The notes under the pieces: generated by a model
Databases searched by the model: none
The model's input: only the letters and a program-made list of their open reading frames with translations
Told to the model about the DNA's origin: nothing
Translations under genes and position numbers: made by a program
IMG/VR virus record: IMGVR_UViG_3300020172_001601
Coordinates: 1-64,000 of that record
Strand: one strand, 5' to 3'
DNA: 64,000 nucleotides
Part shown: positions 14,024 to 55,767 of the stretch, piece by piece
Layout: every line of letters starts with the position of its first letter
Numbering within the stretch: position 1 is the first letter of the stretch

Positions 14024-14650
14024 TTATTTTTTGAGTAGGCTTATGAATAGTCCGTTCCACCATCCTTGATCTAGCTCCTTTTCAAACAAGGTCTTCAGAT
14101 TGAGTTCTTGGATTGCTTGGCGGGTTCCCCGTTGAGGATCGGGCCAGTTCCAGTCATCGACCAAAAACAGAAAAGTATCATCCAACAGTGGATAGAAATA
14201 CGTTAGTGCTTTTAGTTGAGATTCGTAGCTGTGACAGCCATCATATAGGAAGAAATTGACAGGGTTAGGCAGTTCTTCTTTTGTCAAAGAAAAACAATCT
14301 TGCTCGTAGAATTTGTAACTGTTGGGCGTCAGAAGGCTGCTTGTATACTTAATGAATTCCTTCTTTGTCTCGCCGTCTTGGGCAAATTCTGACCAATTAT
14401 CTACGGCGATTGACGAAAGCAGCTTATTTTTGAAGTTTGTTGCAACAAAAGTTGCTCCTTTATGGACGCCGACTTCCAGGTAGTGTGATCCTGGAAGCTC
14501 GCCCAAATTATTCAATAAGTGTCTTATTTTGGGACTTGTGAAGCCAGGAGCTTCAAAAGCCTGACTGGTGAGTTTGGATTGTTCAGCTTCGGCCTTTTGG
14601 ATGGCTTCTTCGATGAACTTAACGATTGAGTCTTCTAGTGGTCTTTGCAT
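14024..14650 (-). CDS. Class I SAM-dependent methyltransferase (Methyltransf_24-like)
   Basis: YLEVGVHKGATF, AVDNWS, FLYDGCHSYESQ, VDDWNW. Confidence 0.85.
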   Translation of the reverse strand: MQRPLEDSIVKFIEEAIQKAEAEQSKLTSQAFEAPGFTSPKIRHLLNNLGELPGSHYLEVGVHKGATFVATNFKNKLLSSIAVDNWSEFAQDGETKKEFIKYTSSLLTPNSYKFYEQDCFSLTKEELPNPVNFFLYDGCHSYESQLKALTYFYPLLDDTFLFLVDDWNWPDPQRGTRQAIQELNLKTLFEKELDQGWWNGLFISLLKK

Positions 14651-14705
14651 GGGATTATATACCTCGCTCTTTCAGCTTTTTATCGTGGCTACTCTCTAAT
14701 ACAGT

Positions 14706-14891
14706 ATGGACAAAAACTTTATCATCAGGTGTCCCAAGTGCCGGTGGGCTAGAATGTCTACGGGCCTCTCGGAAGACCTTAAAGACCTCAAAGAAATTGT
14801 GACTTGCTCAAATTGCGGCAAGCCACGGACTTTTCGTTGCCCTCAATGCGGGCAAATCGCAAAGCAAACCAGAATAAAGAGCAATAGTTAA
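14706..14891 (+). CDS. Small zinc-ribbon protein
   Basis: Three CxxC pairs (CPKC, CSNC, CPQC). Confidence 0.75.
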   Translation: MDKNFIIRCPKCRWARMSTGLSEDLKDLKEIVTCSNCGKPRTFRCPQCGQIAKQTRIKSNS

Positions 14892-16057
14892 TGAAACTCG
14901 TCAAGGCTTATCGTCGCAATCCCGGTGATGGGAAACCTGTCGCTAAGGAAGAGTTGGTCCCTGAGATCAAGTTCCATAAGCACAAGTTCAATAACCGGCC
15001 CCAACCCAAAGACAAGCGCCGAATCTTATTCATCACTTGTTTTAGTGAGTTCGGCTGTGAGTCATTGGCGTTGATGTATTGCATTCCCAAGATCATCCAA
15101 CAAAACCCAGGCACATACGTTATTTGTGTGGGCTGGTTCGGCAGAGAGTATCTGTACCGGCATTTGGTTGATGAGTATTGGGAGATGCACGAAGAGTTTC
15201 AATGGCTTCGTGAACACACTCAGGCGTTCCAGCACACATCCAAGAACCTGTCTAAGCTCGAAGAGTCCTTAAAGGACTTGGGACAGGTTTATAAGGGTGC
15301 CAGCATGGGGCAGATTTGTCTTGGCAACACTTGCCTTGATTGCCGCCATTTCTGGGGCAGCGAAAGTGAGTTGGCGCAGTGTGAAAAGTGTGGTTCTGAC
15401 AATATTGATCGAGCATTATTGGCAAACATTCAACACAATAAGAAGTTTGCGGTTCACATACCACAGCCTAGCTCTAAGGTTTTGGTTCAGGCTAGGTCTT
15501 ATTTGAAACCAAATTCGGTGGGCATTTTTGCTCGTGGTCGAATCTGCTATGGTCGTAATTTGCGACCGGAGTTTTATGAGCGATTGATCGCAAACCTGGA
15601 AGAACAGGGCTACAACCCTATTTGGCTGGGCGAGAAACAAAGTGTATTGCCGTGTCCGGTTCCGCATATCACTGACTTCAGCCGTTTGCCGGAGTCTCGC
15701 AACCTGGAGTTGACATTAGCAATCATTAGCCAGCTAAGGTTCACTGTTCAGTTCTGGACAGCCAGCACACGCCTTTCGTCTATGATGAATGTGCCTTGGA
15801 TATTGTTTGAGTCGCCAGACCAAATCGTTGGCATGGGGCAGGAAGGCAAGCGTATTGCTTTGACTACAAACAACGACAAGAAGAAGCTGGTGCTTTCCCA
15901 ATACCACAATGTAATGGAAAAGGAAGACGAAGCACTGAAGCTAGTCAATCAAGCCATATCAGAGATGAACTTGAATAATTGGGATGACATCATTGGCTTA
16001 GTCGATCAACCGGAAATCATCAGAATGATGCTACTCAGACAGAGTATGTGGAGGTAA
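14891..16057 (+). CDS. GT-B/GT9-like glycosyltransferase with zinc-ribbon insertion
   Basis: LVDEYW, GYNPIWLGEK, DFSRL..SRNLELTLAIIS, STRLSSMMNVP; CLDC...CEKC insert; similar to the downstream gene. Confidence 0.55.
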   Translation: MKLVKAYRRNPGDGKPVAKEELVPEIKFHKHKFNNRPQPKDKRRILFITCFSEFGCESLALMYCIPKIIQQNPGTYVICVGWFGREYLYRHLVDEYWEMHEEFQWLREHTQAFQHTSKNLSKLEESLKDLGQVYKGASMGQICLGNTCLDCRHFWGSESELAQCEKCGSDNIDRALLANIQHNKKFAVHIPQPSSKVLVQARSYLKPNSVGIFARGRICYGRNLRPEFYERLIANLEEQGYNPIWLGEKQSVLPCPVPHITDFSRLPESRNLELTLAIISQLRFTVQFWTASTRLSSMMNVPWILFESPDQIVGMGQEGKRIALTTNNDKKKLVLSQYHNVMEKEDEALKLVNQAISEMNLNNWDDIIGLVDQPEIIRMMLLRQSMWR

Positions 16058-17216: not shown

Positions 17217-17492
17217 ATGGCGTGCAAAGTTGAACTGCGTGATCTGCCACCTAATGCAAGCTGGCAGGAAAGAGATATTGCCTTCAAGAAGATGTTTTCA
17301 GTCTTCAAGAAACAGGTTGCTGAGGCAGGAATACTGCAACAGTGTAAGAAGCACGAATTTTATGAAAGTCCTGGCGAAAAGAAACGCCGCAAGAAGAAGG
17401 AATCCCATAACGCACGGCTCAAGGCCAAGCTCCGGGAAAGTTTCCCAGAGCGAAAGCCTAAGAAAGATACCAAGAACAAAGGTGATAAATGA
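17217..17492 (+). CDS. rpsU: Ribosomal protein bS21 homolog
   Basis: FKKQVAEAGILQQCKKHEFYESPGEKKRRKK matches the bS21 core FKR...AGIL...R.RE.YEKP...R.RK; AAGGAG RBS. Confidence 0.85.
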   Translation: MACKVELRDLPPNASWQERDIAFKKMFSVFKKQVAEAGILQQCKKHEFYESPGEKKRRKKKESHNARLKAKLRESFPERKPKKDTKNKGDK

Positions 17493-17773
17493 GTACCGCT
17501 AAGAAATCCAATATTATGAGCCTATCGGTTGATCTTGAAATTCAAGATCGACTGAAGGCGGTCGCAAAGAAGCGAAATGTCAGCGTTTCTAAATTGGTGC
17601 GTGATATGGTTGAGAAAAACCTATCATCTACCGATGAAGACGTGGACACGGTTATTTTCAAGGTTCCCAATAGTGCCAAAGTCACAGAGGTTGAATTGCG
17701 TAAGTGGTTGGCACCACGGATTGAAAATATTGTCAGGGCATTGGCTATGGACGTTGCCAACGGCAGGGGGTGA
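17489..17773 (+). CDS. Ribbon-helix-helix (CopG/Arc-like) DNA-binding protein
   Basis: IMSLSVDLEIQDRLKAVAKKRNVSVSKLVRDMV. Confidence 0.75.
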   Translation: MSTAKKSNIMSLSVDLEIQDRLKAVAKKRNVSVSKLVRDMVEKNLSSTDEDVDTVIFKVPNSAKVTEVELRKWLAPRIENIVRALAMDVANGRG

Positions 17774-17788
17774 TGATACAATTTCCCA

Positions 17789-18292
17789 ATGAAACCAAAA
17801 GCCGCACCCCTTGCGATAGTTCCCGTAGCCGATATTCCACAGGCGGTGGATGTCCCTGTCGATAATTTACTTCCTGTCTTTCGCACCATCACGCAGATGG
17901 AACAACTTTGCACAGCACAAGAAGGAATTGGCCTATCAGCGGTTCAGGTAGGCATTCCCTGGAAGTTATTTATCGTCCAAAGAGGCCACGGTTACGAATA
18001 TTACATCAACTGTGAGTATAATGGCATTGGTGAAAAACAAAAATCTATCGAAGGATGTTTATCTCTTCGAGACTCGCAGGGCAATTTGCGACGATTCGAG
18101 GTTGACCGATATTCCTCGATTGCCGTAAAGGGCAAGCAACTGAAAATATCATCCGACTCCCCTTCTTTGGTTTTGGATGATGTGGATCACATCGAACACG
18201 ATCTATATGCAGTTGTTTTTCAGCACGAGATAGATCACCACAATGATGTCCTTATCAGCGACATTGGCACCGAAGTCGAACTCACGAGGTAA
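17789..18292 (+). CDS. def: Peptide deformylase
   Basis: All three signature motifs: GIGLSAVQVG, EGCLS, QHEIDH. Confidence 0.95.
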   Translation: MKPKAAPLAIVPVADIPQAVDVPVDNLLPVFRTITQMEQLCTAQEGIGLSAVQVGIPWKLFIVQRGHGYEYYINCEYNGIGEKQKSIEGCLSLRDSQGNLRRFEVDRYSSIAVKGKQLKISSDSPSLVLDDVDHIEHDLYAVVFQHEIDHHNDVLISDIGTEVELTR

Positions 18293-19700: not shown

Positions 19701-19986
19701 TCTCAGTTTCCTAGCTCGACAATGGGAAACTGTTGAACTGCCCAAAGAGAAGAAGTATTTGCTCAGATACTTCAATACGCCGCTTCAAGCGGCCTTCTTA
19801 AAGTACGTCCACATCTTTGGAGATTACTCTAATTTCGTTGACCATACTGGCCTAGCAAGTAGCCCTCGATGGCTCGCAATCCTGTACAATAGATTGCAGA
19901 CATTGCAAACACTACACCGTGAAGCTAGGGCTAATATGGATATGACGGCCCTGGCTCACATTGAATCAGGGAATTACAAATTATGA
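19669..19986 (+). CDS. Hypothetical protein
   Basis: Fills the gap; ATGA-coupled to IDO; start uncertain. Confidence 0.6.
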   Translation: MRASILAQNRDLSFLARQWETVELPKEKKYLLRYFNTPLQAAFLKYVHIFGDYSNFVDHTGLASSPRWLAILYNRLQTLQTLHREARANMDMTALAHIESGNYKL

Positions 19987-21170
19987 GCATGTGGGATATT
20001 ACAGATCGTGGGTTTCTAGGCGTGGCCGATCCACTCGTTTCGCTCACGGCTAAAAACGAAAAGTATATTCCAGCCGCCGTTAGGTTGGAAAATATTGCTT
20101 CTGTTTTGCCGTATTGGATTGAAGAAAGATGTATACGAGAAGAACTCGTACACAACCTGCGTGAGATTGCCCCGTTGATTGATGGTGAGTTTTTACTGAA
20201 TCAAGATGAGGTAAAAACCGAACGGCTGATGCACCTGTATTCCTATATGGCCAGTGCTTATGTCTTCGCTAGACATGAGAATGCCGCCACGAGAATACCG
20301 TCAGAGATCGCTGTTCCACTTACTATGGTCGCTGAAAAGCTAGACCGCAAACCGATCCTTTCTTACGCTTCATATTGTTTAACCAATTGGGAGCGTATAG
20401 ACCCTAATGATGAAATCAAGTTGGGCAATATAAAATTGCTTACAAACTTTTCATCGCCAGAGTCGGGAAAATCAGATGAGGACTGGTTCATTCTGGTTCA
20501 TGTCGATATTGAAAATTGTGCTGCCGATGGTGTTGGTGCCTGTAAACAACTTTTGGAAAATCCCTGGAAGCAAGGCAACGAAGTTCACAATATTGTCACG
20601 GCCAACGATATTCTTACCAAGATTTTCGTCAGCTTGGCGAAGATGAATAAGACAATGGCAAAGATGCCAGATGAATGCAGTCCAGACAATTACTTCCGAT
20701 GGGTGAGGCCGTATATCTTCTCGTTCAATAACATGGTCTATAAAGGCTGTTTCCAAGATCAGCCAATTACCTGTCGAGGGGAAACCGGGGCGCAAAGTAG
20801 CATCATTCCTGCTTTTTTGGCGGCTCTCGAAATCAACCATCAGGATTCCATGCTGACGCATCACCTTATGGAGATGCGTGATTACATGCCAGCCCCTCAC
20901 CGACGATTTCTTTCAAATCTTGTGATCCAGACAGCGAATAATTCCGTTGTGGGGGTAGGTCTGCGAGATTTTGCTCGGCGTGACCCGGTGTTGAAGGACA
21001 TCTACAACGAGTGCGTCAATGAGATTATTGCCTTCCGAAACAAGCATTTCGAGTACGCAGTCAACTATATCTCCAAGAAGGTTGAAAATCCTTCCGGGAC
21101 GGGCGGTACGCCCTATGTCCCGTGGCTGAAACAACTTAGAGAAGAAACCGAGTCACACCTGATCCCGTAA
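19983..21170 (+). CDS. Indoleamine 2,3-dioxygenase family heme enzyme
   Basis: P.LSYASYCL.NW, DEDWFILVH, VRPYI, RGETGAQSS, MRDYMP..HRRFL, FRNKH (heme His), GTGGT. Confidence 0.92.
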   Translation: MSMWDITDRGFLGVADPLVSLTAKNEKYIPAAVRLENIASVLPYWIEERCIREELVHNLREIAPLIDGEFLLNQDEVKTERLMHLYSYMASAYVFARHENAATRIPSEIAVPLTMVAEKLDRKPILSYASYCLTNWERIDPNDEIKLGNIKLLTNFSSPESGKSDEDWFILVHVDIENCAADGVGACKQLLENPWKQGNEVHNIVTANDILTKIFVSLAKMNKTMAKMPDECSPDNYFRWVRPYIFSFNNMVYKGCFQDQPITCRGETGAQSSIIPAFLAALEINHQDSMLTHHLMEMRDYMPAPHRRFLSNLVIQTANNSVVGVGLRDFARRDPVLKDIYNECVNEIIAFRNKHFEYAVNYISKKVENPSGTGGTPYVPWLKQLREETESHLIP

Positions 21171-24014: not shown

Positions 24015-24082
24015 GGCCAGCTACCCGAACTTGGAAGTCGGAATTGATTATCCAAGTATTGTGAAGCCTAAGAAGTAACTTG

Positions 24083-24113
24083 ACCCCGCTGTGGAAACAC
24101 AGCGGGGTTTTTT
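24083..24113 (+). terminator. Intrinsic terminator
   Basis: accccgctgtg-gaaa-cacagcggggt followed by a U tract. Confidence 0.9.
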
Positions 24114-24126
24114 CGTTTATGGCACT

Positions 24127-24133
24127 CTAAATA
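24127..24133 (+). promoter_or_regulatory. Late-type promoter motif CTAAATA
   Basis: T4-late-like; 7 nt before ATG 24141. Confidence 0.6.
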
Positions 24134-26207: not shown

Positions 26208-26226
26208 TGAATTAAGTGGTTTACAG

Positions 26227-26255
26227 AAAAGGACGGCGAGAGCCGTCCTTTTTTT
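26227..26255 (+). terminator. Intrinsic terminator
   Basis: aaaaggacggc-gaga-gccgtcc followed by T7. Confidence 0.9.
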
Positions 26256-26266
26256 GTTTGTATGGT

Positions 26267-26273
26267 CTAAATA
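26267..26273 (+). promoter_or_regulatory. Late-type promoter CTAAATA, 5 nt before ATG (leaderless)
   Basis: CTAAATA-gctgt-ATG. Confidence 0.65.
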
Positions 26274-28327: not shown

Positions 28328-28334
28328 ATAAATA
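28328..28334 (+). promoter_or_regulatory. Late-type promoter ATAAATA, 5 nt before ATG 28340
   Basis: ATAAATA-accgt-ATG. Confidence 0.6.
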
Positions 28335-29136: not shown

Positions 29137-30768
29137 ATGCCATCAGTAGCCGAATTTTTGATCGAACGCCTGGAGAATGCCGGAGTTAAACATATCTTCG
29201 GTGTCCCAGGCGATTATGTTTTACAGTTTATTCAGCAGGTTTCTCAAACCGACAAGATTAAGTTCATCAATACGACTGACGAAAATCATGCCGGATTTGC
29301 AGCAGACGCATATGCGAGAATTCATGGCATTGGTTGCGTGTGTGCCACATATAACGTCGGAGCTTTGAAGCTCTGTAATTCAGTGGCCGGAGCATACGCT
29401 GAAAGATCGCCAGTATTGGTTATCAGTGGCTCGCCAGGACTGAAGGAAAGAAACGATGATTTTCTCCTTCATCATGTTGTCAAAGGGTTCGATAACCAGT
29501 TGAAAATATTCAATCATATAACCTGCCACAGTGTTATATTGGATGACGCCACGACAGCAGGTTGGAAAATCGACCAAGCTCTCGAAATGCTCAAGCACTA
29601 TAAGCAGCCGGTATATATCGAACTGCCTCGTGACGTAGCCGATCAGCCATTGAGATATGACGTATATCGTCAGGGGACTCCTGTGGAGCCGCCGAGCGAT
29701 GAAGAAAATCTCAAAGAAGCTCTGACTGAAATTTCCCAATGGATCAAAGATGCCAAGAATCCTGTCATTATGGCTGGAGTTCAGGTCGCTCGATTTGGAT
29801 TGGGCGGTGCGTTGGTTCGGTTTGCCGAGCGGCACAATATTCCAATGGTCACAACTTTATTGAGCAAATCAACAATCAATGAGCATCACCCATTGTTCGC
29901 CGGAGTATATTGTGGCAATCAAACGTCTGAGGAATCTCTACGAAAATTAGTGGACGATTCAGACTGCCTTCTGATATTCGGCGAAATGCTTACGGATATG
30001 ATGCTAGGGTTCCAATCCCCTAAATTTGCCAAGCGACAAACCGTATCTTGCTCTATTGAAGAGTTGAAGATTCGTAACCATTCTTATACGGACGTGCGGT
30101 TCTTGGATGTCTGCAATCATTTGTTCAAATCTGACTTGGGCAAGCGAGAGGCACCAAATATTCCTGTTCGTAAGAAGGCTGAATCATTTGTGCCTGTGGC
30201 TGACGCCAAGATCACCACAACTCGATTCTTTGAGAAGATCGACAGCATGTTGACCGACCAGATGGCGGTCGTGGCAGATATTGGCGAATGCTTATTTGGT
30301 GCTGCTGAACTCACTGTTTCACATCATCACTTTATCAGCCCCGCATTTTATTGTAGCATGGGTCCAGCCATCCCCGGAGCGTTGGGCTTGCAGATGGCGA
30401 AACCTCATTTGAGGCCAATTGTGCTGGTTGGTGACGGTGCATTCCAAATGTCTGTGACCGAACTGAGTACAATATTAGAACATAAATTGAACCCCATCGT
30501 ATTTGTCCTGAATAATCAGGGCTATACAACAGAAAGATTTCTGTTGGATGGAGACTTCAATAACATAAGAAATTGGGATTACCACAAAGTAACTGAAATG
30601 TTACGAGGCGGTCAGGGAGTTAAAGTAGAGACGGAAGACCAGCTTGAAGCTGCCATCGCTACTGCCTTGAAATGCACTACGTTGTTCGTAGTGAATGTCT
30701 CTGTTGATTCCAAAGACATAACTCCAGGTTTAAGGAGAATGGTTGAAAACCTTTCTAAGAGAGTCTAA
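29137..30768 (+). CDS. ThDP-dependent alpha-keto-acid decarboxylase (pyruvate/indolepyruvate decarboxylase family)
   Basis: FGVPGDY, E..AGFAADAYAR, LLHH, GDGAFQM...NNQGYTTER. Confidence 0.92.
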   Translation: MPSVAEFLIERLENAGVKHIFGVPGDYVLQFIQQVSQTDKIKFINTTDENHAGFAADAYARIHGIGCVCATYNVGALKLCNSVAGAYAERSPVLVISGSPGLKERNDDFLLHHVVKGFDNQLKIFNHITCHSVILDDATTAGWKIDQALEMLKHYKQPVYIELPRDVADQPLRYDVYRQGTPVEPPSDEENLKEALTEISQWIKDAKNPVIMAGVQVARFGLGGALVRFAERHNIPMVTTLLSKSTINEHHPLFAGVYCGNQTSEESLRKLVDDSDCLLIFGEMLTDMMLGFQSPKFAKRQTVSCSIEELKIRNHSYTDVRFLDVCNHLFKSDLGKREAPNIPVRKKAESFVPVADAKITTTRFFEKIDSMLTDQMAVVADIGECLFGAAELTVSHHHFISPAFYCSMGPAIPGALGLQMAKPHLRPIVLVGDGAFQMSVTELSTILEHKLNPIVFVLNNQGYTTERFLLDGDFNNIRNWDYHKVTEMLRGGQGVKVETEDQLEAAIATALKCTTLFVVNVSVDSKDITPGLRRMVENLSKRV

Positions 30769-31346
30769 TGATGAATAGCCCTAACTTCGGTAGGAAGTTC
30801 TATGGTGGTCGAGACGGTGGTAATCGTCGTAACGAAGATGAAAACCGTATCAATTGGCAGATTCGAGTCCCACAGGTTAGGGTCGTCAAAGATGAAGAAC
30901 AACTCGGCATAATGCCGACCGATGAGGCTCGCAGACTAGCTCAAGATGAGGGTCTGGACCTTGTTGAGATTGCTCCCCAGGCCCGTCCTCCGGTGTGCCG
31001 GATTATGGATTACGGACGGTTCAAATATGAGGAGAAGGCAAAGAAAAAGGAAAGCGCCAAGAAGCAGCGTGAGTCGCAAGTGCAATTGAAAGAATTGCGT
31101 TTGCGTCCCGGTATTGCCGAACACGACACCGATACCAAAATCAATCAGGCCAAAAAGTTCCTGGAAGAAGGTAGTCGTGTGCAGTTCACTTTGCAGTTTA
31201 GGGGACAACGAGAGATGTCTCATAAGGATCAAGGCTTTTCTGTCATGAAAAGAGTGACAGATGCTCTTGAACCCGTCTGCATCGTGGAGAAGGCACCCAA
31301 GCTAGAGGGAAACCGGATTATATGCTATTTAGCGCCCAAGGCTTAA
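30768..31346 (+). CDS. infC: Translation initiation factor IF-3
   Basis: RINWQIRVPQVRVV, GLDLVEIAPQARPPVCRIMDYGRFKYE, KELRLRPGIAEHD. Confidence 0.95.
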   Translation: MMNSPNFGRKFYGGRDGGNRRNEDENRINWQIRVPQVRVVKDEEQLGIMPTDEARRLAQDEGLDLVEIAPQARPPVCRIMDYGRFKYEEKAKKKESAKKQRESQVQLKELRLRPGIAEHDTDTKINQAKKFLEEGSRVQFTLQFRGQREMSHKDQGFSVMKRVTDALEPVCIVEKAPKLEGNRIICYLAPKA

Positions 31347-36653: not shown

Positions 36654-37732
36654 AAGACTACTACGAAGTCCTTGGTGTAGAGAGGGGCGCAACTGACGAA
36701 GAGATCAAGAAGGCGTATCGCAAGAGAGCCAGGACTCATCATCCCGATATGAATCCTGGCGATCCTGACGCCACTAAAAGATTTCAAGAAGTCCAAGAGG
36801 CATATGATACTTTAGGCGATCCGATAAAGAAGTCTAGGTATGATGGTGCCGCTCCGCACATGCGATTTCGTCGTAGGCCGCAAACAAAAACAAATCCTGG
36901 TACACCGCCACCAGGATTTGCTTTTGAAGAAGTCATGGAAGAGTTCTTCGGTGGTAGCACTTTCAAAGGCAGAAACATTACTGTCCGTTTGGAAGTAGAT
37001 TTTAAGGAGGTCTTGACTGGTTGCACGAAGCACATCAAGATCAAAAAGCGAAAACGATGTACAGGTTGTATGGGCAATGGGTTCACAGGTTTTCAACCGT
37101 GTCCTAATTGCGAAGGCAGCGGCGCTGTACAGGTTGCTGATTCCCCATTTGGGTTTCGCACTGCTTGTCAAGTTTGTAGTGGAACGGGCAAGGCGAGTGT
37201 AGTAAAGTGTGGGGACTGTATTGGCTCTGGGTATCTCCCAGGCTACCACGAAAAAGCTCTCGACATAAACATCCCTGCTGGTATCGACAACGGTATGCAG
37301 GTTCGGTTGGCCGGAGAAGGTGAGGAATCCCTTCGAGGCGGCAGGGCCGGAGATGTCATGGTCTTTGTTCTTGTTAAAGAACACCCTTTGTTCAGCAGAG
37401 AAGGGCCTCATTTATCTGTTGAAGTCCCTGTTTCCTATACACAACTGGTCCTTGGGGATGAGATTGAAATCCCTACTTTAGCCGAAGGCTCCTTGAAGGT
37501 CAAAGTTCCTGCTGGGAGTCAATCGCACACAAAGTTCCGTCTGAAGGGGAAAGGTTTTCCGGCTGGCAATGGCTCGCTGGGCGACCTAATAGCTACTTTG
37601 AAGATCGAAACGCCTAAATCTTTTGATGAAGACTACAAGCAGGCGTTAGAAAGGCTTTCTGAGCTAGAAAAGAAGAACATCACACCCCGACGAGAACAAT
37701 GGGCGAAAAAAGTCAGCGGCGAGGGTAAATAA
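36650..37732 (+). CDS. dnaJ: Chaperone DnaJ (class A)
   Basis: J-domain DYYEVLGV...HPD, four CxxCxGxG repeats, C-terminal domain IPAGIDNG. Confidence 0.95.
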   Translation: MKDYYEVLGVERGATDEEIKKAYRKRARTHHPDMNPGDPDATKRFQEVQEAYDTLGDPIKKSRYDGAAPHMRFRRRPQTKTNPGTPPPGFAFEEVMEEFFGGSTFKGRNITVRLEVDFKEVLTGCTKHIKIKKRKRCTGCMGNGFTGFQPCPNCEGSGAVQVADSPFGFRTACQVCSGTGKASVVKCGDCIGSGYLPGYHEKALDINIPAGIDNGMQVRLAGEGEESLRGGRAGDVMVFVLVKEHPLFSREGPHLSVEVPVSYTQLVLGDEIEIPTLAEGSLKVKVPAGSQSHTKFRLKGKGFPAGNGSLGDLIATLKIETPKSFDEDYKQALERLSELEKKNITPRREQWAKKVSGEGK

Positions 37733-38412: not shown

Positions 38413-38457
38413 GGTACTACCTTATTTAGCAGCCCCCTAGATGTTTTCAGGACTAAT

Positions 38458-41752: not shown

Positions 41753-41822
41753 GTTATTTTCTCCCTGGTGTATTTAGAACTCTCTGATGTTTTTTGTCGG
41801 CAAGCATACAATACATTATCAC

Positions 41823-42296
41823 GGCCCCATTTGGGGAGGAGTCGATTGCCTTAAACATCGAGAGCCACTTGTGGTTGGCTACAAATATTCCACGATGCGG
41901 AGTCTGCAATAAGACCTGGAGTATCATCTCCTCAAAACTGATCGCTTGTCTTTTAGCGTTAGATCAGGCCGCATGTCTATTGGCGATACAATAGCAGGGT
42001 GACGACAACGACCTTAACTGACGGACAGCCCTAAGAGAGCGGCAATCTCTTAACCGTGGTCTTGGAAGGTACGGGTATCCGTGGTAGGAGCAGAAATAAA
42101 ACACATCAACTATTGTCTGATCGAGGAAGTCCCCAATGTCGTATCGGGGAACTTTAACCCAAGCTGGCCTTGGTTAGTCTATGACGTATTTTCGACATTC
42201 TGCAATAACCAGCCCATTCTAAATGCGCCGGAAAAGAACAATTTCGTGGAAAACTGACCATCCTGGGGAGCTTGTGTAAACAAGCTCCCTTTTTTT
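41823..42296 (+). ncRNA. Large structured non-coding RNA candidate, class unknown
   Basis: About 590-nt gap without a credible ORF; more than 10 hairpins; long-range helix ttccacga(41888)/tcgtggaa(42244); ends in a strong terminator. Confidence 0.7.
42266..42296 (+). terminator. Intrinsic terminator closing the ncRNA candidate
   Basis: gggagcttgt-gtaa-acaagctccc followed by T7. Confidence 0.9.
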
Positions 42297-42339
42297 ATCT
42301 TTGATACTAAATAAGAGCAGAGAGGTTCTACATAATAAC

Positions 42340-43074: not shown

Positions 43075-43488
43075 ATGCCACTCGTAATAGCAAACGTCGG
43101 AGAGTTAGAGCTTCTGGACAAGATGTTGAAAGACGCTCTAACTGTAGACGAAAATTACACATTGAAGTTGTTTAACAACAACGTAACTCCCGACCAAGCA
43201 TCGGTTGCTGGTACGTTTACTGAAACCGCATTCACAGGATATGTGGCTAAGACTTTGACTCGCACTGGTTGGAGTGCCGCCACAACTGTTTCTAACAAGG
43301 CCCAAAGCAGTTATTCACAGCAAAGTTGGACTTGTGGTGCTACGGGTGACACGATCTATGGATATTATGTGATCGCAGCTACGTCTTCTACTCTTCTATG
43401 GGCAGAGCGATTTGCATCTCCAAGAATTGTAGTAAATACAGACGTGTTGAATGTCACGCCGATTTTCACTTTCAATAGCGAAAATTAA
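43075..43488 (+). CDS. Putative virion/tail structural protein
   Basis: Thr-rich beta protein: LKLF.N..TP...FTE..FTGY...IYGYYV...LLWAERF. Confidence 0.6.
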   Translation: MPLVIANVGELELLDKMLKDALTVDENYTLKLFNNNVTPDQASVAGTFTETAFTGYVAKTLTRTGWSAATTVSNKAQSSYSQQSWTCGATGDTIYGYYVIAATSSTLLWAERFASPRIVVNTDVLNVTPIFTFNSEN

Positions 43489-44816
43489 AACAATTCTTCA
43501 TAAGAGATCGAACACAGAGCAGTGGCGCTAGAGCCACTTGCTCTGATCGCTGCCAGAGTCAGTGTGTCAGATGTCCCTGCGATATTAGATGTGATGTTCA
43601 GCCTCGAAATTAAGTTGCTTGCATCAGCGCTGTCTGTGTTTTCTGCATATCCTGAAAGAACAACATCGCCCCCAGTTATGGCAGATGCCGTAACGTCATA
43701 TTCTGATATAGCACTGCTTCCAACCGATGTCCAAGATGGACCCGTCAGAGTTGCATTCCATAGCAATTGCCATTTCAAGGGCTGTGCATTCATTCCTTTG
43801 ACGAATGTTCTGATGAGCCTTAGCTTTGATCTAATATTTGCACTTTTCAATCTTAAAGACAAAAGTGGAATTAAAGTTCCTGCAATTGTTACAGCGGTAT
43901 TTCCATTGTCAATAGACCGCAAGACGCCTGGATAGTTAAAGCCGCCTTCGCTAATCACCGTGCAGCATATTTGTTTCATGCTGGTTGACGAAGCACTTGT
44001 TCCTGTATTGGTGATTTCGTATCGACAAGGGAGAGATGGTCTTGCCATGTATACTGTTGTTTGTACGTTGGCATTCAAAACTTGATGGCAATAGTAAACT
44101 AAACCATTGATTACAAATCCGAATCGAACACGACCGACACCAAGCCACTCAAAGTCAATAATGAAAATTTGAGTTTTTGACATATCCAGAGTGATGCCGC
44201 TGTTTCCGGTTCCGTCTAGTTTGTCGATGTTCCAGGATGATTGATTTACTGCTGTGTCTGTGGGCGATCCACTTGTGCTGCTTCTAACTACAACTCGTAG
44301 ATTGGTTCCATTTTGTTCAAAAAACAGTCCGTTATTAGCATCGAAATATCCAATTCTTTGACGGACGTTAGCTTTGATTGCTCCCATTACGCCAGTCATC
44401 AATATCATTTGGCTTTTGCCGGGCTGATATTGGAAATATTCTTTGGTTTGACGAACTGCTTGGTCGGCGTTTGTGGTTCCAACTTGAAGTTGTTGGGCGG
44501 CTTCAAGGTTTAGCCAAGACACTGCACCGCTGCCGGTTGTCGAAGAGTCCCAAAACAATGATCCATTTGTTTCAACGAGATTTGAATCAAAAAGCGTAAA
44601 TGGAAAACTTGTTCTTAGGCGGCAAAAAGCGTCAATGGCCGCATTGTCTCCAGTGACAAGTTGCACTGGAAGTGGATTGATTTTAGAAACATCTCCGTCA
44701 TTGGTGCCGTCTGGTCCGAAAACGAGTTTGCCTCTTTGATATTGGATGCCTCCAATATCGTCAGATGCCAATTGTGGTCCACCGTTGCCCGGATTTAGTG
44801 TGATGTTGTCAGCCAT
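43485..44816 (-). CDS. Putative virion structural protein with lectin/ConA-like domain
   Basis: DAFCRLRTS..TLFD, YQPGKSQ, IDFEWLGVGRVRFGF; start re-called to ATG 44816, 5 nt after ATATATA. Confidence 0.65.
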   Translation of the reverse strand: MADNITLNPGNGGPQLASDDIGGIQYQRGKLVFGPDGTNDGDVSKINPLPVQLVTGDNAAIDAFCRLRTSFPFTLFDSNLVETNGSLFWDSSTTGSGAVSWLNLEAAQQLQVGTTNADQAVRQTKEYFQYQPGKSQMILMTGVMGAIKANVRQRIGYFDANNGLFFEQNGTNLRVVVRSSTSGSPTDTAVNQSSWNIDKLDGTGNSGITLDMSKTQIFIIDFEWLGVGRVRFGFVINGLVYYCHQVLNANVQTTVYMARPSLPCRYEITNTGTSASSTSMKQICCTVISEGGFNYPGVLRSIDNGNTAVTIAGTLIPLLSLRLKSANIRSKLRLIRTFVKGMNAQPLKWQLLWNATLTGPSWTSVGSSAISEYDVTASAITGGDVVLSGYAENTDSADASNLISRLNITSNIAGTSDTLTLAAIRASGSSATALCSISYEELF

Positions 44817-44860
44817 GCCCTTATATATCTGAAATGAAACAAAAAAAGGATACATAAGGC

Positions 44861-46498
44861 ATGTGGATCACTGCATTCGATAGTTTGAACCTTAATATTT
44901 TTGATGGCGGCGCTGTTGGCGGCGGCACAGCAGATGTATCGGTTGTTTATGGTTCTTTGGCATCGGGCGGTGCTGTTGCTGGTGGAACAGCCCTTAACTC
45001 GGTTGTTTATGGCAATGCGTCATCTGGTGGTGCTATTGGTGGTGGCGAGGGCGGGCTAACCGCTGAGTACAGTTACTTCCCAGATGGCGGGGAAGTTTTA
45101 ACTGGTGGCGAAGCTCTAACCGGCTTTTCTCTCATATTTGATCTTGAGCTTCAGTGGCAAACCAGAGCCACGATTGAGATCGACAAAGAGTTCTCCTGGA
45201 ACACAGGGCTGTTGCCTCTACGATGGTATCGAGTGCAAGGTTGCTGTGTGTTCCCCACGTCAGCAGGCGATGGCATTGGCGCTGGTCAGCCGGGCGGTTG
45301 CGATATAACAGGCATCCAAACTGATGACAACAGTTGCGTAGGAGCTACAGGTAAGCAGCAGTTCATTCAGAACCTCGTTGGCAGCAGCGTTTCGGATATT
45401 TGCCAGCAACTTACAGACAGCAGATTGAATTGGGAAATATGCAGCATCAAGCAATGGAGTCGGCCTGCCGATGGCAGACTTGTTCCTCCAGACGATCAGT
45501 GCAATACATTGACCGAAGTGCCGTTCTGCGAAATTCCTGAATGTCTAAATTTCTGTATTCACACGAATTCAATAACCAACATTGGTGTTACCACATACGT
45601 CATTGAATCGTTTGCTTCTTATATTGCATCTGGCGGTGCAGTAACGGGTGGAGAAGCTCTAACAAGTATTGTCGGTGGCGGCGATACAAATCAGTCATTC
45701 TTTGAATACTTCCCAGATGGTGGCGAAGTGTTGACTGGTGGCGAGGCGTTAACTTCATCTTCGTGGGAAAACGAGTTGTTGACTACGATTGGAGTCACAA
45801 CATACGTTGAAAACCTCGAAGCTGTATTTGGCGCAGGAACAGAAGGGCCTGTGTTGGAGTTGCCTACAATAGTCATAGGCACAAGTTGTGGTTCTTGCGA
45901 TTCGATGCCGGTGGTGTTGTATTTATTCCACAATTTAGCCAACGAAAACGTGTTGGTGAACTACATGCAACGAAATGGATTGGAGTTGCCTAACCCATTG
46001 CCTATGCACTATAGTTCAAGATTGCAATCGTGGGTTGCCAACTTCCACATGACTGGCACCAGTGACGATAATTTAGGCAGCACAGAGACTTGGAGATTTT
46101 CATTTGAGTGGGCATGTGTTAATTCATTTGGTGGCGATGAACTAGGGTCTTCTTCTTGGAAGTTCTCTATGCTTGTTGTTCGCAAGAATGAATTCAGTGG
46201 CATTGATTTCGACACGAGAAACGTGGTTATTTTCCCGCCTGAGCAAATTTGCTTGACGAGTCAAAATTTAGGCTTTGATTTCTCTTTTAAGCTCAACACA
46301 TTGACCAAGTTCGTTTCAAACGACTCGGATATTGTGCCGAATATGACTTTGTTGACGGATAATATCGGATTATTCAAATCCAAGTTTTGGGCAAAGACGC
46401 CGAACTTCACAATTCGTTTGTCCAGGGGAATTACAACAACCGCTGTGCAGCGTCAGGATATTTATCCTATATTCCCTCAAGTGGTCTTGTCGCAATAA
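44861..46498 (+). CDS. Putative virion structural protein, Gly/Cys-rich with internal repeats
   Basis: YFPDGGEVLTGGEALT occurs twice; ASGGAV.GG.AL repeats; ATACATA 4 nt before ATG. Confidence 0.65.
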   Translation: MWITAFDSLNLNIFDGGAVGGGTADVSVVYGSLASGGAVAGGTALNSVVYGNASSGGAIGGGEGGLTAEYSYFPDGGEVLTGGEALTGFSLIFDLELQWQTRATIEIDKEFSWNTGLLPLRWYRVQGCCVFPTSAGDGIGAGQPGGCDITGIQTDDNSCVGATGKQQFIQNLVGSSVSDICQQLTDSRLNWEICSIKQWSRPADGRLVPPDDQCNTLTEVPFCEIPECLNFCIHTNSITNIGVTTYVIESFASYIASGGAVTGGEALTSIVGGGDTNQSFFEYFPDGGEVLTGGEALTSSSWENELLTTIGVTTYVENLEAVFGAGTEGPVLELPTIVIGTSCGSCDSMPVVLYLFHNLANENVLVNYMQRNGLELPNPLPMHYSSRLQSWVANFHMTGTSDDNLGSTETWRFSFEWACVNSFGGDELGSSSWKFSMLVVRKNEFSGIDFDTRNVVIFPPEQICLTSQNLGFDFSFKLNTLTKFVSNDSDIVPNMTLLTDNIGLFKSKFWAKTPNFTIRLSRGITTTAVQRQDIYPIFPQVVLSQ

Positions 46499-46512
46499 TT
46501 TAAGGGTGAAAT

Positions 46513-46911: not shown

Positions 46912-46947
46912 ATGCCGTAATATCCTGGATGGAGCTTGGAGAATCAC

Positions 46948-47949: not shown

Positions 47950-48021
47950 CCTTTAACTTGAATGACTACAACTACACTATATAATTCACTGTGACTTTCA
48001 CTTACTTTCTAGGACTTTCAA

Positions 48022-48564
48022 ATGACAAATTTTACAACAACGGAGCGACATGCGCTCGTATTGGATCACGTTTCTTTGGCTGAAAAGATTGCCAAAAGCA
48101 GAAAAAAGAAACTTACGCAAGTTTCTTATGATGAGTTGAAATCGGCGGCGTATTTAGGGTTGGTTGAGGCTGCTGCACACTATAATCCGCAGGAAAACGA
48201 CTGTTTCCCAGCGTATGCAGTATGGCGAATTATTGGAGCGGTAAGGGATTATCTCCGAGAACTATCTTGGGGTCCACGTTCCAACCCGGTAAAGATGGTA
48301 GAAATTTTTGTTTTTGAAGAACACATCTTTGACCAAGAAATAGTAGATCGTGCCGGATTTTTCGAGAACGTGATTAGGCAGTTACCAACCGTAAACAAAA
48401 CTGTTCTGAAACTTTACTATCAGGAAGGAATGAAGATTAAGGAAATCGCCAGCGATTTAGGTGTTCACCAATCGAGGGTATCCCAAATTCTATCCGACTC
48501 CCGACTAAAACTGAAGAACATATGGAAAGAGCAGCAGGCTGAATTATGGGCCGCAGCAGCGTAA
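48022..48564 (+). CDS. Sigma70-family sigma factor (FliA/WhiG-like regions 2 and 4)
   Basis: DELKSAAYLGLVEAA..Y, FPAYAVWRIIGAVRDYLR, LYYQEGMKIKEIASDLGVHQSRVSQI. Confidence 0.9.
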   Translation: MTNFTTTERHALVLDHVSLAEKIAKSRKKKLTQVSYDELKSAAYLGLVEAAAHYNPQENDCFPAYAVWRIIGAVRDYLRELSWGPRSNPVKMVEIFVFEEHIFDQEIVDRAGFFENVIRQLPTVNKTVLKLYYQEGMKIKEIASDLGVHQSRVSQILSDSRLKLKNIWKEQQAELWAAAA

Positions 48565-48586
48565 ATATGGTCATCAGGGAGGGATC

Positions 48587-49801: not shown

Positions 49802-49839
49802 GTCTTGATTCAAGTTTACTCGTGGGGTAATATTCAATT

Positions 49840-50070
49840 ATGTTAGACCCTACAATCATCGAAAAACTTCGGGAGCGTTATCCCGATCTTCACCCGTTGC
49901 TTTTTCATCGTTCCGTGGAGCGTGCAAAGAGCAACGGTGATTTATTTGATATACTGGATACTATGCCCAAAAAATATCCTTTGATATGGTGTGAAGACAC
50001 TTATCGGTGGGTCACAGCTAAAGAGTTGTACTTATCTGAAGAATTTTTTGGAGAGATGAAAAGTGAATAG
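49840..50070 (+). CDS. Hypothetical protein
   Basis: Preceded by TTGATT-N17-TAATAT, 6 nt before the ATG. Confidence 0.7.
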   Translation: MLDPTIIEKLRERYPDLHPLLFHRSVERAKSNGDLFDILDTMPKKYPLIWCEDTYRWVTAKELYLSEEFFGEMKSE

Positions 50071-52197: not shown

Positions 52198-52247
52198 TTG
52201 TCTGGCTAAATAAACAGATAATGCCACCTGTAGAGAGCGAGGGTAAC

Positions 52248-54231: not shown

Positions 54232-55091
54232 GTTTATTGCCGAACAAAGTGGCTTTTCCTCCTCGTGAAAACTGGCTCAGGCAGCTAGTGCATCACGAGC
54301 AAGACGATTACCATCGTGGATTTTACCAATACTTTGTGAATACGGCTGTGTATGCAGGGCTTGAAGTCATTTGTGATGATAGCTTGGGAGCCATCAGTAA
54401 CCAAGCTATTTCGTTTGTTGTGGACGGCATTAAGTGCGCTTACGATATTTCTGATTATAGCGTTATTCAACCACAAGCCTGGAGCGGTGAATTCAAATGT
54501 TACTTTATGATTCATCATCTGCCTGTATTTGATGTTTACCCTAATCTTGGATCGGTCCCGCAGCAGTCCTTTTTTGATTGGGATGAATACAATCTATTGG
54601 TTGAAGGTCAGTATGATTGTTCTTCAGACTTGATTTTGCATTGTCAAAATTTAGGGCAGATAGCTCGCCGGAAGTTGGCCAGAAAGATATTGGTTGACAA
54701 AGGCTATAACTTAACTACAGAATGTTGGCCGATTTCTGATTTTTGGAAGCTGGGACAAAAATGCTGCGCCAGCGTCCACATCCCTGGGTCTACTCCTCAC
54801 ATACTGGATCGAGGGCAACTTCAATTGATGGCGATGGGAGTTTGCACTGTGTCGCCAAATATCTATTGTTCATTGGGCGAACTTCGACCTGAACCCAATA
54901 TTCATTATGTTTGTGTTCGAGATGACTTTTCTAATCTGATTGAAAAAGTAGATTGGTGTTTGGCCAATCCAACACGTTGTATTGAGATTGGGCAAAATGC
55001 CAAGAAGTTGTTTAATGATTCTTGCACACCACATGCCATATGGAAATACATCAAGAAGCGTATCTCGCCAACCATTAAGATGTTCGCTTAG
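54198..55091 (+). CDS. Glycosyltransferase-like protein (GT90/CgeB-like C-terminus)
   Basis: P..HYV.V.DDFSNLIEK.DWC..NP....EIG.NA motif; start uncertain. Confidence 0.6.
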   Translation: MDSGASVVGSLGLLPNKVAFPPRENWLRQLVHHEQDDYHRGFYQYFVNTAVYAGLEVICDDSLGAISNQAISFVVDGIKCAYDISDYSVIQPQAWSGEFKCYFMIHHLPVFDVYPNLGSVPQQSFFDWDEYNLLVEGQYDCSSDLILHCQNLGQIARRKLARKILVDKGYNLTTECWPISDFWKLGQKCCASVHIPGSTPHILDRGQLQLMAMGVCTVSPNIYCSLGELRPEPNIHYVCVRDDFSNLIEKVDWCLANPTRCIEIGQNAKKLFNDSCTPHAIWKYIKKRISPTIKMFA

Positions 55092-55648
55092 TATCCTAGT
55101 AGCGATTTGACTCGTTCAAAGTCGGCCTCGATGTTGTCACATCGCCAGACCCAAAAAGCTCCCACGTTGAGTGTAGGGTGGTAGTTCGGGGCGACAATAG
55201 AAGCAAAGCCCTCGAAGTCTTCTGGCCACCATCCTGATTTGTGGCATTTCGGATCAGGGTTGCCCACTTCAACCATGTATTCGCCGAGCGGCGTGAATAG
55301 AATTTGCTTATCAGAAATAGACTTCATTCGTTCTACGAGACGGAATCCGTCTTCTTTGGACAGGTGTTCGATGCCATCAGAGCAGTTTGCCACTGTGTAA
55401 TGTTTGTTGAAGCACTTGTGGTTTCCAAGAACGTCAGCTTGAACAAATCGGTGCATTTGGCCTGGAATATTCCAGCAGTCCAAAGCATCGACATACACTT
55501 TATCTTTGAACTCCAAATTTCTGGTGACAGTTGCCTCGCAAGAACAAAGGTCAATGAGTGTTTGTTCATCAATGGTGTTGCCAATGATAGCCCTGATTAC
55601 TTTCTCATAAAGAGGGAAGCTGCCGTGATCTTGGATGTCTAGTTTCAT
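55088..55648 (-). CDS. SAM-dependent methyltransferase-like protein
   Basis: LIDLCS, DGIEHLSKEDG, LFTP.G, HKSGW; CTAAATA 5 nt before the ATG. Confidence 0.75.
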   Translation of the reverse strand: MKLDIQDHGSFPLYEKVIRAIIGNTIDEQTLIDLCSCEATVTRNLEFKDKVYVDALDCWNIPGQMHRFVQADVLGNHKCFNKHYTVANCSDGIEHLSKEDGFRLVERMKSISDKQILFTPLGEYMVEVGNPDPKCHKSGWWPEDFEGFASIVAPNYHPTLNVGAFWVWRCDNIEADFERVKSLLGY

Positions 55649-55767
55649 GAAAGTATTTAGCTACTTTCTTCGTTTTTCTCCCGATGGTACTAGAGCTAAT
55701 GAATTTTTACCTCACTTCAAAATACATACTCATGTAAAGTAACCCATTAAGTACACGGAGGGCTATC

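What the first reader, a model, noticed from the sequence alone, without database searches (positions are those of the whole stretch)
14650..55660. T4-late-like NTAHATA motif about 5 nt before ATG: a leaderless late regulon in a phage encoding IF3, bS21 and PDF
Seen, as motif-spacer-ATG with no Shine-Dalgarno: GTATATA-5 (14650 -), CTAAATA-7 (24141), CTAAATA-5 (26279), ATAAATA-5 (28340), CTACATA-5 (42340), ATATATA-5 (44816 -), ATACATA-4 (44861), CTAAATA-5 (55648 -). Further CTAAATA copies with short leaders occur at 38423, 41771, 42307 and 52206. Established: T4 late promoters are a lone TATAAATA with initiation a few nt downstream, IF3 antagonises leaderless initiation, and bS21 acts at the anti-SD. 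Inference: late mRNAs start at or next to the AUG, and the phage IF3/bS21 retune ribosomes between SD-led and leaderless messages, forming a coupled transcription-translation switch.
Basis: partly seen in the sequence, partly recalled or inferred. Interest (0 to 1): 0.85.

Follow-up and report, generated by a model that had tools for sequence, protein, structure and literature searches.

The report
Promoter fused to start codons
In a 340-kb freshwater phage and its relatives, a short promoter-like motif (TA[A/C/T]ATA) sits 4-6 bases before the ATG of about one gene in ten with no ribosome-binding site, which points to leaderless messages, although no transcript start has been mapped.

Summary
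All eight listed sites are as written. The hexamer TA[ACT]ATA, usually preceded by C, peaks sharply 5 nt before gene-opening ATGs (window Fisher p=4e-6; pooled with relatives p=9e-27).

Orthologues in relatives down to 35% protein identity keep the motif at 4-6 nt while the flanks diverge. The base before the ATG is a pyrimidine in 31 of 34 cases, the usual signature of a transcription start. The motif never precedes GTG or TTG. Three of the four strongest terminators are followed within about 20 nt by motif and ATG.

The same motif also lies 15-53 nt upstream of other genes, usually with a Shine-Dalgarno sequence in the leader. Orthologous start codons switch between the two layouts. So it is a -10-only promoter element that is often fused to the start codon.

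What is not supported:
- No gp55 homologue was found. Two phage sigma-70-family factors are encoded instead.
- 'Late' rests on one virion gene; PhoH, methyltransferases and a CCA-adding enzyme also carry the motif.
- Two host-type promoters (PDF and gene 49840) are also fused to the ATG.
- The IF3/bS21 switch is untested.
- No RNA data exist.

Closest precedent: the leaderless middle/late genes of Thermus phage phiYS40.

The parts
14656..14661 (-). TATATA motif, 5 nt before ATG 14650(-) of a methyltransferase-glycosyltransferase string. The hexamer is a palindrome and overlaps a TATAAT.
24082..24133 (+). Intrinsic terminator (24082-24109 plus T-run), then CTAAATA (hexamer 24128-24133), then 7 nt, then ATG 24141 (342-aa protein of unknown function).
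26225..26273 (+). Intrinsic terminator (26225-26254), then CTAAATA (hexamer 26268-26273), then 5 nt, then ATG 26279 (73-aa ORF, followed by gene 26500-27069).
28329..28334 (+). TAAATA, 5 nt before ATG 28340. It heads a same-strand gene string that runs through the TPP enzyme gene into IF3.
42265..42334 (+). Terminator (42265-42290), distal CTAAATA (hexamer 42308-42313, 26 nt before the ATG) and proximal CTACATA (hexamer 42329-42334, 5 nt before ATG 42340 of PhoH). The tandem layout is conserved in L022 and L023. L025 keeps only the distal motif, plus an SD.
44817..44860 (.). A 44-bp divergent intergenic region with two back-to-back motifs. TATATA (44822-44827, minus strand) lies 5 nt before ATG 44816(-). 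TACATA (44851-44856, plus strand) lies 4 nt before ATG 44861. The same layout occurs in L023, L025 and L046.
43485..44816 (-). Virion structural protein gene (443 aa). The start 'MAD' is conserved in four genomes.
   Evidence: phrog_1645 at E 5e-111; homologues annotated as virion structural protein in T4-like cyanophages; start conservation
44861..46498 (+). Gly/Cys-rich 545-aa protein of unknown function. Its family was used to fetch relatives.
55654..55659 (-). CTAAATA, 5 nt before ATG 55648(-) (186 aa). Conserved in L022 with a different spacer sequence.
38423..38428 (-). CTAAATA, 10 nt before ATG 38412(-). CTA[AC]ATA sits at exactly 10 nt in all five syntenic genomes (very short leader class).
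41771..41776 (-). CTAAATA, 18 nt before ATG 41752(-), with an SD (GGGAG) in the leader. Conserved in 4 of 5 genomes at 15-23 nt, always with an SD.
37726..37731 (+). TAAATA overlapping the DnaJ stop codon, 42 nt before the SD-led gene at 37774. Kept as TA[AC]ATA in five genomes.
48562..48567 (+). Candidate leadered motif copy (TAAATA overlapping the stop codon of the sigma gene), 19 nt before the SD-led gene at 48587. Other candidates of the same kind: 49443-49448 (before 49502), 52207-52212 (before 52248) and 57595-57600 (before 57644).
17754..17788 (+). Host-type promoter TTGCCA-17-TACAAT (with TG extension), then 6 nt, then ATG 17789 of peptide deformylase. This is a start-codon-fused layout without the motif.
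49805..49839 (+). Host-type promoter TTGATT-17-TAATAT, then 6 nt, then ATG 49840 (76 aa). The -10 hexamer (TAATAT, TACTAT or TATAAT) stays 5-6 nt before the ATG in L022, L023 and L025; the TTGATT -35 at 17 nt is seen in L022 and L023.
48022..48564 (+). Phage sigma factor (regions 2 and 4; nearest solved structures are FliA/sigma-28 and WhiG). It has its own conserved TTGAAT-16-TATAAT promoter (47958-47985) and a 36-nt leader. Syntenic in every relative examined.
62375..63073 (+). Second sigma-70-family gene (region 2 plus region 4, ECF-like). It is preceded by TGGGGTATAAT.
30768..31346 (+). Translation initiation factor IF3, with both domains and the linker.
17217..17492 (+). Ribosomal protein bS21. 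It is SD-led (AAGGAG 6 nt before the ATG).
17789..18292 (+). Peptide deformylase.

Best explanation
TA[A/C/T]ATA, usually preceded by C (CTAAATA), is the -10-like element of a phage-specific promoter class. The class has no conserved -35, only an A/T-rich patch 16-19 nt upstream of the hexamer. It is shared by a clade of freshwater huge phages.

RNA polymerase would start 5-6 nt downstream of the hexamer. At about half of these promoters that position is the A of the ATG, so the message is leaderless or has a leader of only 1-2 nt. Such a message must be translated without SD/anti-SD pairing. At the other promoters of the class a leader follows, usually with a normal SD.

The recognising factor is most likely one of the two phage-encoded sigma-70-family proteins, whose genes sit behind host-type promoters (inferred). 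That would give a cascade from host sigma to phage sigma to motif promoters.

Shown: the motif, its spacing, its conservation and its interchange with SD-led layouts. Inferred: the TSS position, the sigma assignment and the timing.
For: - Sharp offset peak in the window and pooled with relatives.
- Orthologues at 35-87% identity keep the motif at 4-6 nt while the flanks diverge.
- The same orthologous start codon (PhoH 'MARQ', the 545-aa family) is motif-5-ATG in some genomes. In others it is motif plus an 18-nt SD leader, or SD only. The motif is therefore not part of a fixed ribosome-binding site.
- CTA[AC]ATA copies: 35 of 66 lie at most 70 nt upstream of a gene-like ATG. All 13 at 4-7 nt lack an SD. 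Of 9 at 15-30 nt, 6 have one.
- Pyrimidine at -1 in 31 of 34 cases against 47% elsewhere (p=1.7e-7).
- The motif never precedes GTG or TTG at 4-6 nt.
- Strong terminators sit 17-31 nt before three of the ATGs, leaving the motif as the only promoter candidate.
- No conserved -35.
- The sigma gene is syntenic in all relatives and keeps its own TATAAT promoter.
- Precedent: phiYS40 middle/late leaderless transcripts (PMC3594737).
Against: - No transcript 5' end is available; no RNA run holds this DNA.
- The statistics pool related genomes, so the counts are not independent events.
- The host evidently uses SD sequences, and I could not identify it. Whether its ribosomes handle leaderless AUGs well is therefore unknown.
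- The sigma assignment is by proximity and synteny only.
- A sigma with region 4 would normally be expected to read a -35, and none is seen.
- Only 64 kb of the 340-kb genome was examined.
Confidence: 0.7

Rival explanations
1. The motif marks a late regulon read by a T4-type gp55 system, and the phage IF3 and bS21 retune host ribosomes between SD-led and leaderless messages, forming a coupled transcription-translation switch.
For: - The motif shares the TAAATA core of the T4 late box (consensus TATAAATA, my own knowledge) and has no -35 (PMC2988020).
- One motif gene is a virion structural protein.
- IF3 and bS21 are present and canonical.
- IF3 co-occurs on many of the contigs that carry the 545-aa family.
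- The IF2/IF3 balance is known to modulate leaderless initiation, and it shifts during phiYS40 infection (PMC3594737).
- Ribosomes lacking bS21 favour the leaderless lambda cI message (PMC10491246).
Against: - No gp55 homologue in the window or the fetched related loci.
- Motif genes include PhoH, methyltransferases and a CCA-adding enzyme.
- About half of the motif promoters have leaders, most of them with an SD.
- Host-type promoters are also fused to ATGs.
- From the cited literature, extra IF3 and extra bS21 would be expected to disfavour leaderless messages, not favour them.
- IF3 appears to be co-transcribed from a motif-type promoter at 28329, with no strong terminator in between.
Confidence: 0.15
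2. The motif is an mRNA-level, SD-independent translation signal: an A/U-rich enhancer read by bS1, bS21 or the 30S subunit. It is not a promoter, and transcripts start further upstream.
For: The motif is A/U-rich and sits just 5' of the start codon. The phage encodes a ribosomal protein that acts near the anti-SD (PMC7162821).
Against: - Five invariant positions fit sequence-specific DNA recognition better than the loose binding of an enhancer.
- The same motif is conserved 15-53 nt upstream of genes, most of which have a normal SD.
- It follows strong terminators directly.
- The pyrimidine at -1 is a feature of transcription starts.
Confidence: 0.1
3. Chance occurrence of A/T-rich hexamers in A/T-rich intergenic DNA, with wrongly called start codons.
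For: Intergenic DNA is A/T-richer than coding DNA. Several of the start codons differ from the longest-ORF start.
Against: - Single-offset peak.
- Conservation in genomes of 35-51% GC with diverged flanks.
- Conserved N-termini confirm the start codons.
- No such peak before GTG, TTG or control triplets.
Confidence: 0.02

Closest known systems
Leaderless middle/late transcripts of Thermus thermophilus phage phiYS40 (Sevostyanova et al. 2007, as summarised in PMC3594737)
   Same: A phage-specific promoter class whose transcripts lack a leader, so that temporal transcription class and translation mode are linked. An interplay with IF2 and IF3 has been proposed.
   Different: - From my own knowledge, the phiYS40 host belongs to a phylum where ORF-adjacent -10 regions are common (see PMC12340547), whereas this host clearly uses SD sequences.
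- phiYS40 alters the levels of host factors, whereas this phage carries its own IF3 and bS21.
- The motif differs.
- The phiYS40 transcript starts were mapped experimentally; these were not.
Bacteriophage T4 late promoters (8-bp TATA box read by gp55 with gp33 and gp45; PMC2988020, PMC7892883)
   Same: A -10-only, A/T-rich element about one helical turn upstream of the start, with no -35 and a shared TAAATA core.
   Different: - The first two bases of the T4 box are not conserved here; C is preferred just 5' of the hexamer.
- No gp55 homologue was found.
- From my own knowledge, T4 late messages have SD-bearing leaders.
- The cyanophage S-RIM8 and Salicola phage SCTP-2 homologues of the virion gene do not have the fused layout.
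ORF-adjacent -10 regions in Deinococcus-Thermus (PMC12340547; also Actinobacteria, from my own knowledge) and the lambda PRM-cI leaderless message (PMC10491246)
   Same: A -10 element at a fixed short distance from an AUG, with no SD.
   Different: Those cases use the host housekeeping sigma and a TANNNT-type -10. Here a distinct hexamer dominates. Only two genes (PDF and 49840) use a host-type -10 in this way.
Huge phages with translation genes (Al-Shayeb et al. 2020, PMC7162821) and bS21-encoding freshwater phages (Chen et al. 2022, PMC9723584)
   Same: Genomes over 200 kb that encode IF3, bS21 and PDF. Phage bS21 has been proposed to bias initiation towards phage messages.
   Different: Neither paper, in the abstract and passages I read, describes a start-codon-fused promoter class. 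The Chen et al. phages are predicted to infect Bacteroidetes and have a different bS21 gene context.

Membership tests
Leaderless mRNA genes | The transcript 5' end lies at, or within a few nt of, the A of the AUG | not testable with these tools
   No RNA run holds this DNA. Indirect support: pyrimidine at -1 in 31 of 34 cases.
Leaderless mRNA genes | A promoter -10 element at a fixed short distance (about 5-7 nt) upstream of the start codon | tested here: met
   Peak at 4-6 nt; conserved in orthologues.
Leaderless mRNA genes | No Shine-Dalgarno sequence, and an AUG (not GUG or UUG) start | tested here: met
   0 of 13 CTA[AC]ATA sites at 4-7 nt have an SD-like tetramer. The motif at 4-6 nt occurs before 39 ATGs and no GTG or TTG.
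T4-type late transcription (gp55/gp33/gp45) | An 8-bp TATAAATA box at -10 | tested here: not met
   Only the hexamer TA[ACT]ATA is conserved. The two preceding positions are not TA; C is preferred at the position just 5' of the hexamer.
T4-type late transcription (gp55/gp33/gp45) | No -35 element | tested here: met
   No informative column upstream of the hexamer apart from an A/T-rich patch at -16 to -19 from it.
T4-type late transcription (gp55/gp33/gp45) | A gp55 homologue is encoded | tested here: inconclusive
   phmmer with T4 gp55 against all ORFs of the window and 11 loci gave a best E-value of 0.15. This was a single-sequence search, and only 64 kb of the 340-kb genome was available.
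T4-type late transcription (gp55/gp33/gp45) | The gp33 co-activator and a sliding-clamp activator | not tested
   No search was made.
Phage sigma-70-family factor directing a phage promoter class | A phage-encoded sigma with region 2 (and region 4) | tested here: met
   Gene 48022-48564 has r2 and r4 and is closest to FliA and WhiG. Gene 62375-63073 has r2 and r4.
Phage sigma-70-family factor directing a phage promoter class | That sigma recognises this motif | not testable with these tools
   There is only co-occurrence: the sigma gene is syntenic in every genome that has the motif.
Bacterial IF3 (infC) | IF3_N and IF3_C domains joined by a basic linker | tested here: met
   Pfam E-values of 5e-31 and 1e-29. 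End-to-end alignment to solved bacterial IF3 chains, the 180-residue 8jsg_A among them.
Bacterial IF3 (infC) | A non-canonical (AUU-type) start codon for autoregulation | tested here: not met
   The gene starts with ATG, overlapping the upstream stop codon. The defining feature itself comes from my own knowledge of E. coli infC.

The most novel reading that the evidence does not exclude
A clade of freshwater huge phages whose host uses SD sequences has evolved its own sigma-dependent promoter class that places the transcription start on the AUG. It uses its own IF3 and bS21 (and PDF) to shift host ribosomes between SD-led and leaderless initiation during infection. That would be a virus-encoded, two-layer temporal switch of transcription and translation.
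Probability: 0.15. Interest if true: 0.85.

Novelty: new variant of a known kind. Interest (0 to 1): 0.62.

Why it matters
Huge phages are known to carry translation-initiation genes, but no message feature has been tied to them.

This work defines such a feature: a conserved, easily recognised promoter class that is fused to start codons in about one gene in ten. Orthologues flip between this layout and ordinary SD-led leaders.

That gives a concrete, testable substrate for asking what phage IF3 and bS21 do.

It also matters for annotation. Gene callers that expect an RBS mis-start these genes. The longest-ORF start is wrong for 26279, 28340, 42340 and 44816(-).

Tried and rejected
- Megablast of 10 kb against phage records found no match.
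- tRNA scan found none.
- RNA-seq search: no run holds the DNA, only unrelated 'related protein' runs.
- T4 gp55 search found nothing.
- Host inference from IF3 gave only about 50% identity to Kofleriaceae MAGs, plus one 65% 'Neisseriaceae MAG' entry that may be a mis-binned phage contig. The host remains unknown.
- ESM Atlas look-ups for the 24141 and 44861 proteins were uninformative.
- PHROGs gave no function for most motif genes.
- I looked for a metagenome contig ending at the ATG as a proxy for a transcript end. L039 simply starts inside the gene.
- A generic TANNNT peak before starts is only weak (5 at offset 6 against about 2 elsewhere). The host-type fused layout is therefore limited to a few genes.
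- I decided against downloading the whole 595-kb relative LR756511.1.
Full report
**What the window is.** The 64-kb window is the first 64 kb of IMG/VR contig IMGVR_UViG_3300020172_001601 (340,341 bp) from a freshwater metagenome. GC content is about 46%. Genes lie mostly on the plus strand. There are no tRNAs and no close match among deposited phages.

Pfam and PHROGs identify the following genes:
- a DnaE-type polymerase, an NAD ligase and a dUTPase;
- PhoH, DnaJ, a Cpn10-like protein and thioredoxin;
- an IDO-like dioxygenase and a TPP enzyme;
- an aldehyde dehydrogenase, plus collagen-like repeats;
- IF3 (30768-31346), bS21 (17217-17492) and PDF (17789-18292);
- two sigma-70-family factors (48022-48564 and 62375-63073).

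The nearest deposited genome is the 595-kb uncultured phage LR756511.1, at 44% identity for DnaE and for a virion protein. Homologues of window genes lie on metagenomic contigs of 246-602 kb. This is therefore a member of a clade of huge phages.

Within the window, TA[ACT]ATA occurs 58 times on both strands. The distance to the next ATG is exactly 5 nt for six of these.

Of 11 ATGs preceded by the hexamer at 4-7 nt, seven open gene-like ORFs, against 169 of 2208 other ATGs (Fisher p=4e-6). There is a single-offset peak at 5 nt.

CTAAATA is no more frequent than composition predicts (my arithmetic). Yet 9 of its 11 copies point at a gene start within 60 nt.

Three of the four strongest intrinsic terminators (24082, 26225 and 42265) are followed within about 20 nt by the motif. 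The ATG follows directly at 24141 and 26279; at PhoH a second, proximal motif comes first. After such a terminator there is no room for any other promoter or for an SD.

**Comparative evidence.** This is the core of the case.

I took the family of the 545-aa protein encoded at 44861 (48 homologues). From it I fetched 15 IMG/VR loci, four syntenic loci from contigs of 45-603 kb, further metagenome loci and 41 kb of LR756511.1.
- Homologues at only 35-40% identity carry TACATA or TAAATA 5-6 nt before their first ATG. Their surrounding sequence is unrelated, and their GC content ranges from 35% to 51%.
- The divergent neighbour is a virion structural protein (phrog_1645, E 5e-111; it is annotated as such in T4-like cyanophages). 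It keeps TATATA 5-6 nt before a conserved 'MAD' start in the window, L023, L025 and LR756511.1.
- PhoH keeps a proximal TA[AC]ATA 5-6 nt before a conserved 'MARQ' start in the window, L022 and L023. In the distant IMG/VR loci a protein of about 243 aa with a similar N-terminus, probably PhoH (assigned by length and N-terminus only, no family search), has the motif at 4-5 nt.
- Gene 38412(-) has CTA[AC]ATA at exactly 10 nt in five genomes.

Pooled over the window and 11 loci, the counts at offsets 4, 5 and 6 are 11, 16 and 7, against about 2.5 per other offset (p=9e-27). These counts include related genomes and are not independent events.

**Why it is a promoter and not a ribosome-binding signal.** The same motif is conserved 15-53 nt upstream of other genes, and most of those leaders carry an ordinary SD. 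Examples are 41752(-), 37774, 48587 and 49502.

Orthologous start codons switch layout between genomes.
- The 545-aa gene is motif-4/5-ATG in the window, L023, L025 and L046.
- It is motif plus an 18-nt leader with an AGGTGAT-type SD in L022, L037, L038 and L041, which are 72-87% identical in protein.
- It is SD-only in L024.
- PhoH in L025 has lost the proximal motif and gained AAGGAG.

Among CTA[AC]ATA copies, all 13 at 4-7 nt lack an SD-like tetramer. Of the 9 at 15-30 nt, 6 have one, and two of the three exceptions are the distal PhoH promoters.

No -35 is conserved. There is only an A/T-rich patch 16-19 nt upstream of the hexamer and a preference for C just 5' of it.

**Why the start is probably on the AUG.** A -10-type element normally lies 5-7 nt from +1 (established knowledge of sigma-70-family promoters). 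PMC2988020 places the T4 late box one helical turn upstream of the start.

The base before the ATG is a pyrimidine in 31 of 34 motif-proximal starts, against 279 of 592 other gene-like ATGs (p=1.7e-7). This is the Y(-1)/R(+1) preference of bacterial RNA polymerase.

The motif at 4-6 nt precedes 39 ATGs and no GTG or TTG. This fits the AUG requirement of leaderless initiation, which I state from my own knowledge.

All of this is indirect. No RNA run holds the DNA, so the TSS remains inferred.

1. T4 gp55 finds nothing in the window or the related loci. Instead there are two sigma-70-family genes. One is closest to FliA/sigma-28 and WhiG, is syntenic in every relative including the distant ones, and keeps its own TATAAT promoter and 36-nt leader. 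The other has regions 2 and 4 and is ECF-like.
2. 'Late' is supported by one virion gene only. Other motif genes are PhoH, methyltransferase-glycosyltransferase strings and, in a relative, a tRNA nucleotidyltransferase.
3. The fused layout also occurs at host-type promoters. TTGCCA-17-TACAAT lies 6 nt before the PDF ATG. TTGATT-17-TAATAT lies 6 nt before ATG 49840, with the -10 hexamer kept at 5-6 nt in three relatives.
4. The host clearly uses SD sequences. SD hexamers peak 3-7 nt before about 30 starts.
5. IF3 is a canonical two-domain factor. It sits in a gene string headed by the motif promoter at 28329, with no strong terminator in between. bS21 is itself SD-led.
6. In the literature I could read, a higher IF3-to-IF2 ratio disfavours 5'-terminal start codons (PMC3594737, citing Grill et al. 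2001). Ribosomes lacking bS21 favour the leaderless lambda cI message (PMC10491246). On that basis, extra IF3 and extra bS21 would if anything favour SD-led messages. The proposed switch is possible but untested.

**Comparison with what is known.** The closest precedent is phiYS40, whose middle/late transcripts are mostly leaderless and whose infection shifts host IF2 and IF3 levels (PMC3594737).
- ORF-adjacent -10 regions are common in Deinococcus-Thermus (PMC12340547).
- T4 late promoters share the -10-only architecture and the TAAATA core. The full 8-mer consensus and the gp55 homologue tests were not met here.
- The homologous virion gene in cyanophage S-RIM8 and Salicola phage SCTP-2 lacks the fused layout, so the layout is specific to this clade.
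- The huge-phage paper reports IF3, S21 and PDF genes, but the passages I read make no mention of leaderless messages (PMC7162821).
- Five targeted full-text searches found no description of this arrangement.

**Verdict.** This is a real, conserved promoter class that is frequently fused to start codons in a clade of huge freshwater phages. It is best filed as a new variant of a known kind: phage-specific -10-only promoters giving leaderless messages.
- The promoter-plus-leaderless reading has a confidence of about 0.7.
- The T4-gp55 and IF3/bS21 switch reading has a confidence of about 0.15.

Noticed in passing
window 34732-36267: A UDP-glucose/GDP-mannose dehydrogenase homologue is spread over three overlapping ORFs in different frames (34732-35019, 35012-35860, 35827-36267). 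The same 282-aa piece is called in an independent Logan assembly of this phage (L001), so this may be a real frameshifted or split gene.
   Followed up: partly
window 19983-21170: An indoleamine 2,3-dioxygenase family gene (Pfam IDO, E 3e-61) in a phage. This is an unusual auxiliary metabolic gene.
   Followed up: no
window 4968-5840: An ion-transport protein (Pfam Ion_trans plus Ion_trans_2), i.e. a voltage-gated-type cation channel homologue, encoded next to the DnaE polymerase gene.
   Followed up: no
window 1-1966: Collagen triple-helix repeat protein(s) (Pfam Collagen, E 3e-47). The first ORFs are G-X-Y-like repeats that run off the start of the contig.
   Followed up: no
window 14651-14705: The TATATA at 14656-14661 is a palindrome in a 55-bp divergent region. 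It could serve the minus-strand methyltransferase (5 nt to its ATG) and, 44 nt away, the plus-strand string that leads to bS21. It also overlaps a TATAAT on the minus strand.
   Followed up: partly
window 62351-62377 and 49821-49842: Two promoters share the extended form TGGGGTA(T/A)(A/T)AT just upstream of a start codon: 7 nt before GTG 62375 of the second sigma gene, and 6 nt before ATG 49840. This may be a further promoter subclass. The true start of the sigma ORF (GTG 62375 or ATG 62414) is unresolved.
   Followed up: partly
window 23223-24014, 36180-37732: A PspA/IM30-like protein (below the Pfam cut-off), a Cpn10-like protein and a full DnaJ. This is a chaperone and membrane-stress set conserved in the syntenic relatives.
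   Followed up: no
runs X4, X5, X11, X12: DNA runs labelled with a single organism ('organism A', not a metagenome) hold 12-21% of the sampled words of window 41700-47000. They may be cultures or enrichments that contain a relative of this phage, and so a lead to the host.
   Followed up: no
P0148: An IF3 65% identical to the phage IF3 is deposited as 'MAG: Neisseriaceae bacterium' on a 70-kb contig. It is either a host clue or a phage contig binned into a bacterial MAG.
   Followed up: no
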